From contig NC_083279.1 of the NCBI RefSeq assembly GCF_963506605.1, positions 52,886,001-52,950,000 of the forward strand: DNA of 64,000 nt, in the 5' to 3' direction. This stretch comes from Zootoca vivipara. Taxonomy: Eukaryota. Below, piece after piece: positions 4,088 through 8,719 of this stretch; positions within the stretch are counted from its first letter, which is position 1, and every line of letters begins with the position of its first letter. The translations under genes and the position numbers were made by a program. Under the pieces are notes generated by a model that saw only the letters and a program-made list of their open reading frames with translations, had not been told where the DNA came from and searched no databases.

Positions 4088-4639
4088 CTACTTCCGCAAC
4101 CAATCCTTAATAGCCACCAGGACATCAGCCAGCCAGGTATCATTGCCATCATCAGAAAGATGCACGCCATCTGTGTGGTAAAGGCGTTCCTCATGGAAGG
4201 TTATAGCGGGGTGTGGTACCACGAGTCCATTCAAGGCCAGCACCTTTTTGGCCACAGCCATATCCAAAAACTTCCTTGCTTTGTTCACCGCGGCTGGTGA
4301 ATCGCAATCGCGCCAAATGCGCCTCTCGAGCAGCGAAGACCAACAGATGGTCACGGACGGGCAAGTAGCCAACAGTTCGTCAAAGTCCTGAAATATATTC
4401 CATTTTAAATCTATGGCTTTCCGATAAGCCAGATCGTTCTCGCCAAGTTGCACCACCATGATGTCGGGGGGACCCCGCAAGGCAACCTTAGCCCGCACAG
4501 CCGGTAGGAATTCGGACCAACGCATACCCCGTCTAGTAATCCAAGTGATTTTGAAACAGCGTGGCAGCCCGAGATTAGGGCCAAGGTTCCGTCTGCAAGC
4601 GCGCGCCCGGGCCCAATGCATGATGCTATGGCCCACCAT
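4088..4639 (-). CDS. SGNH/GDSL-family hydrolase (esterase) domain of the Ngaro element
   Basis: Block I (KIW)MVGHS, block II Gly in RRGMRW, block III QLGEND, block V DGVHLS. The frame stays open upstream of the ATG to 4717; probable splice acceptor at 4660/4659. Confidence 0.88.
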   Translation of the reverse strand: MVGHSIMHWARARACRRNLGPNLGLPRCFKITWITRRGMRWSEFLPAVRAKVALRGPPDIMVVQLGENDLAYRKAIDLKWNIFQDFDELLATCPSVTICWSSLLERRIWRDCDSPAAVNKARKFLDMAVAKKVLALNGLVVPHPAITFHEERLYHTDGVHLSDDGNDTWLADVLVAIKDWLRK

Positions 4640-4717
4640 CCAGATCTTAGTTAGACGTCCTGAAAGCGAAGTAAAGGAAAAAACATAAGTGCGGCCGCCA
4701 GGTGTAGCAAAAGGAAG

Positions 4718-5632: not shown

Positions 5633-7485
5633 AGGTGTTCCGGGAAAGCCTCCGGCAACTCCTGAGCCTCTGGTGCTAGAGAGCGGAAGCGGTCCATCTG
5701 GAAACGAGATAAAGCGTCCGCAATATCGTTATTGATTCCAGGTACGAATTTAGCTGAAAAATAAATGTTCAATTTTAAGCATAGGAGGACGAAGGCACGC
5801 AGCAAGGCCATAACCCTCGGTGATCGGGAGGATTGCCTGGAAAGGACGCCAACGACAGCCTGGTTATCGGTCCAAAAGCATACACGGTGATCCTTAAACT
5901 CCTCCGCCCATAAATGCACGGCCACGACAATGGGAAAGAATTCCAAGAAGGTTAGATCGCGGGTAATAGGAGTATTTCGCCACTCAGCCGGCCACCGTTG
6001 CGCGCACCACCGGCCCCGAAAATAAACACCAAACCCAAGGGAGCCGGCGGCGTCAGACTGCACCTGAAAATCCACCCGGAGCCTCAGATTATCCTGCCAA
6101 AGGGACACCCCATTATAATTCTCCAGGAATGCCAACCATATTTCCATGTCAGATTTTACCCCCTTATTAAGACGCACCCTGTGATGCGGTTTTTTGAGGC
6201 CAGCTGATAGCCTGGCCAATCTGGCGCAGAAAGGTCGCCCGGGAGATACTACCCGACACGCGAAGTTAAGATGGCCCAGGAGGGATTGGATCTGTTTAAG
6301 GGTCACTTTCTTAACGGGTAGCATCTCTGCGATAGTCCGCTTTAGAGCTGCCAACTTCTCTACCGGTAGCCGTGAAGTCTGTGTCACTGTGTCCAGTTCG
6401 ATTCCGAGGTATGTTATGGTAGACACAGGTCCCTCCGTCTTTCCAGCGGCCAAAGGTACTCCTAAATAAGCGGTTAAGGAGGCAAAGGCTTCTAGGAGGT
6501 AAGCACAATCATTGTTATTAGCTCCTCCACAAAAAAGGAAGTCATCCAAGTAGTGTGTGACACCCTCCAAACCAGTTCTGAAACGGAGGGCCCAGTCCAA
6601 GAATGTGCTAAAGGACTCGAATGCGTAACACGCTATGGAGCAGCCCATGGGCATGGCTTTGTCCACAAAGTACTCCCCTTCAAATTTAAAACCGAGCCAC
6701 CTGAAATCTCGAGGATGTACCGGGAGAAGTCGGAAAGCCGATTCGATGTCACATTTTGCCAGGAGGGCGCCTTTGCCAAACCGCCTAATAAGTTTGATAG
6801 CCTGGTCAAAGGAGGCGTACTTGACCGTGCACAGCTCCTGGGGGATGCCGTCATTGACAGAGAAACCCTTCGGGTGAGAAAGATTGTGAATGAGTCTGAA
6901 CTCCCCGGGGTTCTTTTTAGGAACTATGCCCAATGGTGAAATATGTAGATTCGAGATAGGGGGTGTGTTAAATGGGCCGGCAACCCTCCCCGCAGCAACC
7001 TCCTTAGATATCTTTTTCCTGGCGACCTCGGGCATCTCTTTTACAGATTTTTGATTTGGTGGATCGCCCGACAGGGGCGGGATAGCAACTGGAATTCTGA
7101 AACCTGAGGAAAAACCTTCCCATAGATATTTGGCTGCTGAGTTATTAGGGTAGTGTGCAAGCAAGGATTTAAGGGGGTCTAATTTAATCGGCGAGTAAGC
7201 CAAAGCCAAGGACCGATCAGTAACGGTTACCTGATGCGCCCTGGCCGGCTGCAGATCCACCTCTTGACCCCTGCTGAGAGTTACCGCGCCTCCCTCGAAA
7301 GGACTGCCGACCTTTGAAGCAGGCGGCGGCTGAGTGCGAACCCTGGCATTTATCGCACTCATGGCTATACTTGCAGTAGGCCCTGCTACAGGTGCCTTTG
7401 TTAAATTCCCAACACACAAGGCGGCGGGTTGATTTTTTATAATCCAACTTTGTAGGTCGCAATGTGTCTGGCTGCTTCTTCTCAA
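5605..7485 (-). CDS. Reverse transcriptase / RNase H (pol) of the Ngaro element
   Basis: RT motifs FRLIHNLS, KCDIESAFR, MPMGCS, HYLDDF, YLGIELD; RNase H residues SDAAG, LEFFPI, TDNQAV, ADALSR. The listed start is TTG; the first ATG is at 7362. Confidence 0.95.
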   Translation of the reverse strand: MRRSSQTHCDLQSWIIKNQPAALCVGNLTKAPVAGPTASIAMSAINARVRTQPPPASKVGSPFEGGAVTLSRGQEVDLQPARAHQVTVTDRSLALAYSPIKLDPLKSLLAHYPNNSAAKYLWEGFSSGFRIPVAIPPLSGDPPNQKSVKEMPEVARKKISKEVAAGRVAGPFNTPPISNLHISPLGIVPKKNPGEFRLIHNLSHPKGFSVNDGIPQELCTVKYASFDQAIKLIRRFGKGALLAKCDIESAFRLLPVHPRDFRWLGFKFEGEYFVDKAMPMGCSIACYAFESFSTFLDWALRFRTGLEGVTHYLDDFLFCGGANNNDCAYLLEAFASLTAYLGVPLAAGKTEGPVSTITYLGIELDTVTQTSRLPVEKLAALKRTIAEMLPVKKVTLKQIQSLLGHLNFACRVVSPGRPFCARLARLSAGLKKPHHRVRLNKGVKSDMEIWLAFLENYNGVSLWQDNLRLRVDFQVQSDAAGSLGFGVYFRGRWCAQRWPAEWRNTPITRDLTFLEFFPIVVAVHLWAEEFKDHRVCFWTDNQAVVGVLSRQSSRSPRVMALLRAFVLLCLKLNIYFSAKFVPGINNDIADALSRFQMDRFRSLAPEAQELPEAFPEHLWNLGNEMS

Positions 7486-8719
7486 TGTATGGGCCCACGT
7501 GCTCGCCCCAGAAGTTCTGGTCCCTTAAATCCCACCTGGTACTGGACAACAGGGAGGCATTCCTACGAAAGTCCTCGTCGTACAGGAGTGCCGGACCTTC
7601 ACCGGCTAGGGCATAAGCTTTTCTGACGTGGGCCATATAGGCCAGGAGGTGCATTGCCCTTTTTGGGTAGCAGGCCACAATGGTGCCCATATAAATTTGG
7701 AAGCCGTCCAGCCAATTTTCGAAGGTCCGCTCAGCCCTGGGCTCCCTGTATCTACGCTTGCCATAACTATTTCTTATTTTTTCCCCTTTACCCTTCATCT
7801 TAGCTGGAGGAAGGAGAGTAAACATGTCCACATAATCACCGTTAAGGATCTTGTTACGCTTTTTGTTAGACAAGTGATTACCCAAGATGAAATCCGAAGA
7901 CACAAATGTGGATTTCTTAACCTCTGGTACCAACGCACCGTCGCGCCACTCAAGCGTACCATTGAAGGTCTTGCGGTGCGAGTTTGCCCGCCTCTCGTGC
8001 GCCCAAGCAGGCAGACCTACAAGTTCCTCGCCCTCGCCCCAATAGCCCTCTAAGGTAAGGTCGTCGTCGTCCGAACTAGAAGAATTACCTGAGTCGTCAT
8101 GGGGATCCGTGTGCTTGATCTTCTTGGTCTTCTTCTTGCTGGTTGTTTGTGGTGCTTCCTTCCGCGTCCGATCCGACTGACCCGTATTATTTCCCAGACT
8201 TGAGGGCTGCGCAGGCTCCAAGTTCTCGCCATCAGAGGTGGTATTTGAAGACAGGCTCCTTGACCTAGGTTGAGTGCCCTGAGAAAGATTGAGATTGCGC
8301 AAACAAGTCGGGGTACCCAGGGAAAACTGGGAAATAGGATTATTACAGCTAGGTGTAGAAGGACCAACGGCCGCCAAGTCGGATGAAGTTGTTAGCGCAG
8401 CGGAAGCCGACTGGGATCTGGTACCAACGCGACCAGGTTCCGCTGTAATACAGGAGGCTGAGGTTCCGGGGCGCGCCTCGTCCTCTCTCGGCGTGTCTTC
8501 AACGAAATCCTGAGATCCCTCAGCAGGGAGCAACTGTATTGTAGCACCCGGCCTTGATACCTGCTGAAAGAAGTTCTGAAAGCCAGAAAACAAGGTAGCC
8601 AAGGCTTCGGGAGGGATGGGGATAGGGGTAACCGTAGGAGCGCTGGCAGTGGTAGCATTGGTGGCGCGCCTTTTGCTAGTTGCTGGTGCGGTCTGGGTCT
8701 GTTTCCGCTTTGGAGCCAT
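7217..8719 (-). CDS. Gag-like ORF1 of the Ngaro element
   Basis: 500 aa, ATG start, N-terminal basic PKRK, long low-complexity region, C-terminal Cys/His zinc-finger-like CWEFNKGTCSRAYCKYSHECDKCQGSHSAAAC and RG-rich tail; positioned 5' of pol. Confidence 0.85.
   Translation of the reverse strand: MAPKRKQTQTAPATSKRRATNATTASAPTVTPIPIPPEALATLFSGFQNFFQQVSRPGATIQLLPAEGSQDFVEDTPREDEARPGTSASCITAEPGRVGTRSQSASAALTTSSDLAAVGPSTPSCNNPISQFSLGTPTCLRNLNLSQGTQPRSRSLSSNTTSDGENLEPAQPSSLGNNTGQSDRTRKEAPQTTSKKKTKKIKHTDPHDDSGNSSSSDDDDLTLEGYWGEGEELVGLPAWAHERRANSHRKTFNGTLEWRDGALVPEVKKSTFVSSDFILGNHLSNKKRNKILNGDYVDMFTLLPPAKMKGKGEKIRNSYGKRRYREPRAERTFENWLDGFQIYMGTIVACYPKRAMHLLAYMAHVRKAYALAGEGPALLYDEDFRRNASLLSSTRWDLRDQNFWGEHVGPYIEKKQPDTLRPTKLDYKKSTRRLVCWEFNKGTCSRAYCKYSHECDKCQGSHSAAACFKGRQSFRGRRGNSQQGSRGGSAAGQGASGNRY

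What the first reader, a model, noticed from the sequence alone, without database searches (positions are those of the whole stretch)
4088..8719. One splice donor at the end of gag and two in-frame acceptors predict Gag-recombinase and Gag-esterase fusion proteins
Seen (minus strand): gag ends GCA TCA G|GT AAC CGT TAC TGA, so a CAG|GTAACC donor lies at 7231/7230, phase 1, 4 codons before the stop. The YR frame has no ATG until codon 55, but is preceded by gctttatctcgtttccag|ATGGACCG (5698/5697), also phase 1. Joining gives ...A-S-D-G-P-L-P-L-S-S-T-R-G-S-G-V-A-G-G-F-P-G-T-P-L-E-S-W..., a G/S/P-rich linker and an 822-aa Gag-YR (1533-nt intron removing most of pol). The SGNH ORF is preceded by a strong acceptor, cttatgttttttcctttacttcgctttcag|GACGT (4660/4659), again phase 1. 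Joining gives ...A-S-G-R-L-T-K-I-W-M-V-G-H-S, which restores the strand before the catalytic Ser, and a 686-aa Gag-SGNH (2571-nt intron). Known: ORF1 proteins of some L2/CR1/RTEX LINEs carry an SGNH esterase domain, and introns have been reported in some YR retrotransposons. Inference: alternative splicing tethers the recombinase and esterase to Gag for particle packaging without a protease. I do not know of this scheme being described for Ngaro, but cannot check the literature.
Basis: partly seen in the sequence, partly recalled or inferred. Interest (0 to 1): 0.88.

Follow-up and report, generated by a model that had tools for sequence, protein, structure and literature searches.

The report
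Spliced leader fusions in a lizard Ngaro retrotransposon

Summary
The element on the minus strand (2863-10953) is a young, intact Ngaro tyrosine-recombinase retrotransposon with gag, RT/RNase H, YR and SGNH ORFs and 100 % identical split direct repeats.

Both proposed acceptors (5698/5697 and 4660/4659) coincide with the exon starts of RefSeq gene models in related lizards. In Zootoca vivipara LOC118082278 and Paroedura picta LOC143819120, two isoforms share one Gag-derived N-terminus and then continue into YR or into SGNH.

In every such model the donor is not at the end of gag. It sits at an invariant Gly codon in mid-gag, which is TCAG|GTAATT at 8089/8088 here, also phase 1. No model carries the Gag zinc-finger core upstream of YR or SGNH. 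The fused part is therefore a 210-aa, largely disordered Gag leader, giving products of about 536 and 400 aa rather than 822 and 686.

I found no description of this scheme in the open literature I could search. The evidence comes from annotation models and protein comparison.

The parts
10730..10953 (-). Split direct repeat A1, the 5' end of the element
   Evidence: 100 % identical to 3431-3654
7217..8719 (-). gag-like ORF1, 500 aa. Residues 1-224 are predicted disordered except helix 37-54. A folded helical core spans about 238-415, followed by a CCCH zinc finger at 436.
   Evidence: and 46/49. Closest relative is 75 % identical, in Zootoca vivipara.
8089..8719 (-). Coding part of the proposed shared first exon: gag codons 1-210 plus the first base of Gly211
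   Evidence: Fused RefSeq models and their cognate Gag proteins diverge exactly here. Gly211 is invariant in 20/20 sequences.
8083..8091 (-). Proposed main 5' splice site, CAG|GTAATT, cut between 8089 and 8088, phase 1
   Evidence: Rank 3 of 393 GT sites and the best within the ORFs. Homologous to the junction in P0043, P0044, P0047, P0065 and P0166.
7225..7233 (-).
   Evidence: Present and rank 6 of 393. Gly-Asn here is conserved in 16/18 Gag C-termini, but no annotated model uses it.
5605..7485 (-). pol ORF (RT and RNase H, no methyltransferase), in the +1 frame relative to gag. It lies inside both proposed introns.
   Evidence: Pfam RVT_1 E 8e-10; frames
5697..5711 (-). 3' splice site 1, tatctcgtttccag|A, cut between 5698 and 5697. 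It lies inside the pol codons for L-S-R-F-Q.
   Evidence: Rank 5 of 436 AG sites. YR homology of many RefSeq models starts at window 5698.
4718..5697 (-). Tyrosine recombinase exon: 325 codons after the junction codon, then stop TAG at 4720-4718
   Evidence: The nearest upstream in-frame stop is at 5731. The first ATG is codon 75, inside the conserved N-terminal domain.
4659..4673 (-). 3' splice site 2, tacttcgctttcag|G, cut between 4660 and 4659, preceded by a long pyrimidine tract
   Evidence: Rank 4 of 436. SGNH homology of the fused models starts at 4663-4648.
4088..4659 (-). SGNH esterase exon: 189 codons after the junction codon. Block motifs GHS, GEND and DGVH are intact.
   Evidence: AlphaFold2 pLDDT 97. 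Foldseek hits to GDSL/SGNH hydrolases at TM 0.72-0.76 and to the ZfL2-1 ORF1 esterase. 1367 homologues.
3653..4056 (-). Split direct repeat B1
   Evidence: 100 % identical to 2863-3266
3431..3654 (-). Split direct repeat A2
   Evidence: 100 % identical to A1
2863..3266 (-). Split direct repeat B2, the 3' end of the element. A 164-nt unique spacer (3267-3430) separates it from A2.

Best explanation
The feature is a recently inserted, intact Ngaro-type tyrosine-recombinase retrotransposon.

Its unspliced RNA is the genome and the mRNA for Gag. It probably also gives Gag-Pol, through a +1 frame change near the gag stop; that step is inferred.

Two subgenomic mRNAs are made by alternative splicing. 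Both use one 5' splice site inside gag (8089/8088, after codon 210, phase 1). One joins the 3' splice site at 5698/5697 and the other joins 4660/4659.

Both mRNAs use the gag AUG. They encode a leader-recombinase of about 536 aa and a leader-esterase of about 400 aa.

The shared 210-aa leader is mostly disordered. It carries one conserved helix (residues 37-54), a Lys-rich basic patch and an acidic/Ser tail. It lacks the folded Gag core and the zinc finger.

Shown here:
- the sites, their phases and their strength;
- their exact correspondence to exon junctions of RefSeq models in several lizard Ngaro families;
- the invariance of the donor Gly codon at protein level;
- the absence of conserved start codons for YR and SGNH.

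Inferred:
- that these models rest on RNA evidence;
- that this copy is spliced in the same way;
- that the leader supplies nuclear import and/or co-assembly with Gag.
For: **Same-locus isoforms**
- Zootoca vivipara LOC118082278 isoforms XP_060139102.1 (P0044, 533 aa) and XP_034965332.2 (P0043, 397 aa) share 207 N-terminal residues with the Gag of the same locus (P0002). They then match window 5698-4721 (79 %) and 4663-4094 (71 %) respectively.
- Paroedura picta LOC143819120 isoforms X1 and X3 share a 305-aa prefix, then continue into YR or SGNH.

**Junction position**
- In four lacertid families the fused model and its cognate Gag diverge exactly at ...(D/E)(D/E)(S/T)|G.
- Junction residues are D (G+AT) for YR and G/E (G+GA or G+AA) for SGNH, as phase 1 predicts.
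- Gly211 is invariant in 20/20 Gag sequences although it lies in a poorly conserved region. The next residue always has a codon that can start with a purine.

**Breadth**
- The N-terminal extensions of SGNH models and of YR models are homologous to each other. This holds in cordylid, anole, gecko, anguid and several frog annotations.

**Site strength**
- The 8089 donor is the best GT in the ORFs. The two acceptors rank 4 and 5 of 436.

**No independent start codons**
- The SGNH Met is L, I or V in relatives and lies in the middle of strand beta-1.
- The first ATG of YR would delete the conserved N-terminal domain.

**Acceptors are the constant part**
- Other RefSeq models join points inside RT or inside YR to the same two acceptors.
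Against: - No RNA reads were seen. RefSeq XP models are computational and their evidence notes could not be read.
- No fused protein came from a transcript-type source (Logan, ENA) in the lists.
- The DNA of relatives could not be fetched. Conservation of GT and AG is therefore inferred from protein junctions, not seen.
- The end-of-gag GGTAAC is also conserved at protein level and might be a second donor.
- In some families YR and SGNH are annotated as one protein. Here they share a frame, separated by one TAG and 20 codons, so other routes to SGNH exist.
Confidence: 0.72

Rival explanations
1. One reading: the donor at the end of gag (7231/7230) is the one used, giving whole-Gag-YR (822 aa) and whole-Gag-SGNH (686 aa) fusions.
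For: - The site exists, is phase 1 and ranks 6th of 393 GT sites.
- The Gly-Asn it encodes is conserved in 16 of 18 Gag C-termini, although the preceding tail is variable.
Against: - No protein with the Gag CCCH finger upstream of YR or SGNH appeared among the 45 Gag hits (length range up to 875 aa). None appeared among the 150 best SGNH representatives of any length, nor among the 64 relatives of the Zootoca fusion.
- The Zootoca locus that has both spliced isoforms ends Gag with S-A-N-R-Y, which excludes GT at that position.
- The conserved C-terminus has other possible causes: the overlapping pol frame, or a frame-change signal at the stop.
Confidence: 0.12
2. No splicing. YR is made as a Pol-YR fusion by a frame change in the 5731-5605 overlap, or by reinitiation. 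SGNH is made from its own ATG at 4639, or by read-through of the YR TAG, which is in the same frame 20 codons upstream.
For: - Overlapping or frameshifted YR ORFs are the textbook description of these elements (PMC3783388, PMC9210276).
- YR and SGNH share a frame.
- Some relatives are annotated as YR-SGNH fusions.
- An ATG does exist at 4639.
Against: - The ATG is not conserved and truncates strand beta-1.
- The 20 codons between TAG and the acceptor are a pyrimidine tract ending in CAG, typical of a 3' splice site.
- This view does not explain why Gag-leader fusions with identical junctions recur in independent annotations of diverged families.
Confidence: 0.1
3. Annotation artefact: the fused models arise from gene-prediction software chaining homologous ORFs across consensus GT/AG sites, with no corresponding mRNA.
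For: - All fused proteins are RefSeq XP or similar predictions.
- TE loci are often mis-modelled. Some models in the lists are clearly patchy, for example P0026, P0021 and P0035.
Against: - Several loci carry multiple numbered isoforms, and the Zootoca locus does so in two annotation releases.
- The same junction occurs in families only 38-60 % identical and in distant hosts.
- Chaining by homology would not cut Gag at a disordered, poorly conserved point, nor cut RT in mid-domain.
- The sites used are the strongest in this element.
Confidence: 0.15

Closest known systems
Ngaro YR retrotransposons with a fourth SGNH-hydrolase ORF (described in amphibians; Goodwin and Poulter 2004, as cited in PMC9210276)
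   Same: - ORF order gag, RT/RNase H, YR, SGNH.
- No methyltransferase domain.
- Split direct repeats A1...B1-A2-B2.
   Different: - Published descriptions I could read speak of separate or overlapping ORFs and give no expression mechanism.
- Here the evidence points to two spliced mRNAs with a shared Gag leader.
- This copy has a 164-nt spacer between A2 and B2.
Subgenomic splicing in retroviruses and some LTR retrotransposons (one major 5' splice site, alternative 3' splice sites; in some retroviruses env inherits the gag AUG and a few codons). Recalled from general knowledge, not tested here.
   Same: - Unspliced RNA serves as genome and gag mRNA.
- Downstream genes without their own start are reached by splicing from one upstream donor.
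- The intron is retained in genomic copies.
   Different: - The donor lies 630 nt into gag, so a 210-aa leader is shared.
- The downstream products are an integration enzyme and an esterase, not an envelope protein.
- The element has no protease.
Esterase-bearing ORF1 proteins of L2/CR1-type LINEs (ZfL2-1 ORF1 esterase, PDB 4c1b)
   Same: - SGNH fold; 4c1b is among the Foldseek hits.
- In both cases the esterase is tied to a retroelement's N-terminal protein module.
   Different: - In LINEs the esterase is a domain of the single ORF1 product.
- Here it is a separate 3' ORF joined to the Gag leader only by splicing.
- The structural match to 4c1b is weak (TM 0.48, rmsd 18.5).
Foamy-virus Bet-type fusion (an N-terminal part of one protein spliced onto another ORF). 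Recalled from general knowledge.
   Same: A sizeable N-terminal segment of one gene product is reused as the N-terminus of another through splicing.
   Different: Unrelated proteins and a different element class. Nothing here was tested against it.

Membership tests
Ngaro (YR retrotransposon, order DIRS) | RT/RNase H ORF followed by a tyrosine recombinase ORF on the same strand | tested here: met
   RVT_1 hit in 5605-7485. Phage_integrase hit plus strong homology to XerD-like recombinases in 4718-5695.
Ngaro (YR retrotransposon, order DIRS) | Split direct repeats A1 ... B1 A2 B2 instead of LTRs or inverted repeats | tested here: met
   A is 224 nt and B is 404 nt, both 100 % identical and in the right order. 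Caveat: a 164-nt unique spacer lies between A2 and B2.
Ngaro (YR retrotransposon, order DIRS) | No methyltransferase domain in pol (this separates Ngaro from DIRS1 and PAT) | tested here: met
   The only Pfam hit in the 626-aa pol is RVT_1.
Ngaro (YR retrotransposon, order DIRS) | Vertebrate subgroup: SGNH hydrolase ORF downstream of YR | tested here: met
   literature statement in PMC9210276.
SGNH/GDSL hydrolases | Catalytic Ser in block I, Gly in block II, Asn in block III, Asp-x-x-His in block V | tested here: met
   GHS, GEND and DGVH are readable in the ORF. G9, G72, D163 and G171 are invariant; N74 and H166 are nearly invariant in 38 sequences.
SGNH/GDSL hydrolases | Three-layer alpha/beta/alpha flavodoxin-like fold | tested here: met
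   AlphaFold2 pLDDT 97.3. Foldseek probability 1.0 and TM 0.72-0.76 to GDSL acylhydrolases.
SGNH/GDSL hydrolases | Esterase activity | not testable with these tools
   Needs an enzyme assay.
Tyrosine recombinases | Catalytic R, K, H-x-x-R, H/W and Y residues | tested here: inconclusive
   ALRVGE, SKTDQ, HSFRIG, GRWKS and AYKGY are readable in the ORF. The Pfam score of 23.6 is below the 27.1 cut-off. Homology to annotated recombinases is strong. No residue-by-residue alignment to a solved recombinase was made.
Retrovirus-like subgenomic splicing | Consensus 5' and 3' splice sites in compatible phase | tested here: met
   (the PWM is rough).
Retrovirus-like subgenomic splicing | Same junctions in related elements | tested here: met
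   Met at the level of protein models only. DNA of relatives was not available.
Retrovirus-like subgenomic splicing | Spliced RNAs observed | not testable with these tools

The most novel reading that the evidence does not exclude
Vertebrate Ngaro retrotransposons, in squamates and frogs at least, share a conserved alternative-splicing programme that the literature I could search does not describe. A donor at an invariant Gly codon, at the boundary between the disordered N-terminal half of Gag and its folded core, is joined to acceptors in front of the start-less YR and SGNH ORFs. Gag, recombinase and esterase would then all carry the same roughly 200-300-aa disordered leader. In an element with no protease, this leader would act as a common address tag for nuclear import or co-assembly.
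Probability: 0.55. Interest if true: 0.7.

Novelty: new variant of a known kind. Interest (0 to 1): 0.62.

Why it matters
How YR retrotransposons express their downstream, often ATG-less ORFs is not explained in the accounts I could read. Those accounts only speak of overlapping or frameshifted ORFs.

A shared-leader splicing scheme would give a concrete answer that public RNA-seq can test at once. It would show that retrovirus-like subgenomic splicing also arose in this separate retroelement order. It would also identify a conserved, disordered Gag leader as a module common to three of the four proteins, which is a handle for studying assembly and nuclear targeting.

There is a practical side too. 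Many 'uncharacterized protein' and 'integrase/recombinase XerD homolog' RefSeq entries in lizards and frogs are products of these elements rather than host genes.

Tried and rejected
- **DNA of relatives and Logan contigs:** I could make no DNA-level test of GT/AG conservation or of synonymous sites, and no search for spliced transcript contigs.
- **Other copies in the window:** none. The element is single-copy in the 64 kb.
- **Primary Ngaro papers:** Goodwin and Poulter 2004 and Poulter and Butler 2015 are not held. The novelty statement rests on the open papers only.
- **Pol by splicing, end-of-gag donor:** joining 7231 to the acceptor at 7104/7103 would be in frame with pol. It would delete the conserved pol N-terminus (SPIKL...GFS), so I rejected it (reasoning).
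- **Pol by splicing, mid-gag donor:** joining 8089 to 7542/7541 runs into the pol-frame stop at 7527, so I rejected it.
- **Frameshift-stimulating RNA structure after the gag stop:** not significant, z -0.08.
- **Rfam scan of the element:** no match.
- **Pfam on gag:** no family.
- **Joined models:** Each exon was searched by reference. Only lengths and the three-base junction codons were computed.

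
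Full report
**What is there**

The finding lies inside one element on the minus strand, 10953 to 2863. It has four intact ORFs:
- a 500-aa gag-like ORF (8719-7217);
- a 626-aa pol (7485-5605), in the +1 frame relative to gag;
- a recombinase ORF, open from 5728 to 4718;
- a 183-aa ORF from an ATG at 4639 to 4088.

Pfam finds RVT_1 in pol, a sub-threshold Phage_integrase match in the third ORF, a weak Lipase_GDSL_2 match in the fourth, and nothing in gag.

The ends are split direct repeats. A1 (10953-10730) equals A2 (3654-3431). B1 (4056-3653) equals B2 (3266-2863). Both pairs are 100 % identical.

This is the architecture of Ngaro tyrosine-recombinase retrotransposons. A fourth SGNH-hydrolase ORF is already on record for them in amphibians (PMC9210276, citing Goodwin and Poulter 2004).

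Identical repeats and four open ORFs mark a young copy. The closest relatives of all ORFs are in lacertid lizards (Zootoca, Podarcis, Lacerta), so the host is probably a lacertid or a near relative. There is no second copy in the window and no other long ORF.

**Checking the observation**

- CAG|GTAACC at 7231/7230, four codons before the gag stop;
- ...cgtttccag|ATGG at 5698/5697;
- ...cgctttcag|GACG at 4660/4659.

All are phase 1. The introns would be 1533 and 2571 nt and the products 822 and 686 aa.

gag, YR and SGNH share one genomic frame. Any phase-1 GT in gag would therefore be compatible with both acceptors.

I ran a rough position-weight scan of the sense strand, using consensus frequencies from memory, so it gives a ranking only. 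The acceptors rank 4th and 5th of 436 AG sites. It ranks 3rd and is the best inside the ORFs.

**Evidence from relatives**

*The gag search.* This returned lacertid Gag proteins and two Zootoca vivipara proteins of one locus, LOC118082278. When mapped back on the window:
- P0044 (533 aa) matches gag 8719-8153 and then 5698-4721.
- P0043 (397 aa) matches the same gag part and then 4663-4094.
- The two share their first 207 residues with each other and with the full Gag of that locus, P0002.
- They diverge after ...ELEDDS. Gag continues G-T-S-S-S, the YR isoform D-G-P-L-P-L-S, and the SGNH isoform E-K-L-V-N-I-W-L-F-G-H-S.
The donor, however, is in the middle of gag.

*Other lacertid families.*
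- P0166 is 93 % identical to Gag P0019 over residues 1-229, then switches to SGNH.
- P0047 follows Gag P0010 up to ...SETEDES, then reads D-G-A-L-P-L.
- P0065 and P0066 follow Gag P0037 up to ...DTDEE(S/T).

*A gecko.* In Paroedura picta, isoforms X1 and X3 of LOC143819120 share a 305-aa prefix and continue into YR or SGNH.

*Wider spread.* The extensions in front of SGNH and those in front of YR are homologous to each other in models from several squamates and frogs. The squamates are Hemicordylus, Anolis sagrei, Eublepharis and Elgaria. Many of these models are numbered isoforms.

*The acceptors are constant.* Further models join points inside RT or inside YR to the same two acceptors.

**The donor**

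In an alignment of 20 Gag sequences, Gly211 is invariant. It sits in an otherwise poorly conserved, low-complexity stretch. The next residue is T, N, S or E, all with codons that can begin with a purine.

In the window the codon is GGT within TCA G|GT AAT.

An AlphaFold2 model of Gag has low overall confidence, as expected for a half-disordered protein. It predicts residues 1-224 as disordered apart from helix 37-54, and a helical core from about 238 to 415 followed by the CCCH finger. The donor therefore sits at the boundary between leader and core.

No protein with the CCCH finger upstream of YR or SGNH turned up in any of three lists:
- the Gag hits, with a length window up to 875 aa;
- the 150 best SGNH representatives of any length;
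- the relatives of the Zootoca fusion, up to 933 aa.

The Gly-Asn it encodes is conserved in 16 of 18 Gag C-termini. Two other causes could explain that conservation. The overlapping pol frame is one. A frame-change signal at the stop is the other: reading on in +1 from TAC TGA T gives Y-D-R-S-L-A-L-A-Y-S-P-I-K-L, the conserved start of pol. I could not separate these causes without DNA of relatives.

**Why the downstream ORFs need a donor**

*YR.* The YR frame is closed by TAA at 5731, 11 codons above the acceptor. Its first ATG is codon 75, inside the conserved N-terminal domain.

*SGNH.*
- The frame runs back only to the YR stop (TAG, same frame, 20 codons upstream).
- Its single early Met is L, I or V in relatives.
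- In a high-confidence model (pLDDT 97.3) that Met lies in the middle of strand beta-1, T-K-I-W-M-V-G, just before the catalytic GHS.
- The fold matches GDSL/SGNH acylhydrolases and includes the ZfL2-1 LINE ORF1 esterase among the hits.
- The catalytic blocks are conserved.

**Most likely mechanism**

Unspliced RNA gives Gag and, by a frame change still to be shown, Gag-Pol. Two spliced mRNAs run from the 8089 donor to the two acceptors. They give leader-YR (about 536 aa) and leader-SGNH (about 400 aa). These sizes are close to the 533 and 397 aa of the Zootoca isoforms.

What the leader does is inference. It carries a conserved helix, a Lys-rich patch that looks like a nuclear import signal, and an acidic/Ser tail. 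It could supply import, or contact with Gag, to enzymes that are not part of a polyprotein in an element without a protease.

**Limits**

- All cross-species evidence is from predicted proteins. I saw no reads and could not read the evidence notes of the RefSeq records.
Neither the DNA of relatives nor Logan transcript contigs could be examined.
- The two primary Ngaro reviews are not held. 'Not described' means not found in the open papers searched.

**Verdict**

It is most likely wrong about the donor and hence about the size and nature of the fusion partner. The scheme is a new variant of a known kind, namely subgenomic splicing of a retroelement. It appears conserved across squamate and anuran Ngaro elements and can be tested directly with public RNA-seq.

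Noticed in passing
window 7200-7245 (minus strand): gag ends AAC CGT TAC TGA T, and pol is in the +1 frame. Continuing in +1 from the stop gives Y-DRSLALAYSPIKL, the conserved pol N-terminus. The last four Gag residues (G-N-R-Y/Q) are conserved in relatives. This suggests a stop-stimulated +1 frame change for Gag-Pol. An 8-bp hairpin starts at the UGA, but the fold is not significant (z -0.08).
   Followed up: partly
window 4660-4720 (minus strand): The YR stop TAG and the SGNH ORF are in the same frame, 20 codons apart. Several relatives are annotated as single YR-SGNH proteins (P0089, P0320, P0344). In other families the esterase may therefore be a C-terminal domain of the recombinase, or may be reached by read-through.
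   Followed up: partly
window 3267-3430: A 164-nt unique spacer lies between split repeats A2 and B2. The textbook Ngaro layout has A2 directly followed by B2.
   Followed up: no
window 8720-10729 (minus strand): A 2-kb leader lies between A1 and the gag ATG. It holds three sets of tandem repeats: a 95-nt unit at 9111-9308, an 84-nt unit at 9799-9980 and a 54-nt unit at 10620-10716. It also holds a GC-rich stretch. It may be promoter or enhancer sequence; the transcription start is unknown.
   Followed up: no
proteins P0178/P0316 (Lacerta agilis LOC117053410), P0181/P0317 (Eublepharis ZNF318-like), P0165 (3112 aa): Long host-like proteins carry a C-terminal Ngaro-type SGNH domain. One protein has six tandem SGNH domains. 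These may be exaptations, or chimeric transcripts that use the strong SGNH acceptor.
   Followed up: no
proteins P0319, P0053, P0054, P0059, P0163, P0169, P0193: RefSeq models in Podarcis join points inside RT or inside YR to the same YR and SGNH acceptors. These probably come from truncated or decayed copies that use cryptic donors.
   Followed up: partly
window 7803-7804 (minus strand): A strong AG site (tctccttcctccag|C, rank 2 of 436) lies inside gag and is also phase 1. It encodes the conserved L-L-P-P-A motif and is probably coincidental.
   Followed up: no
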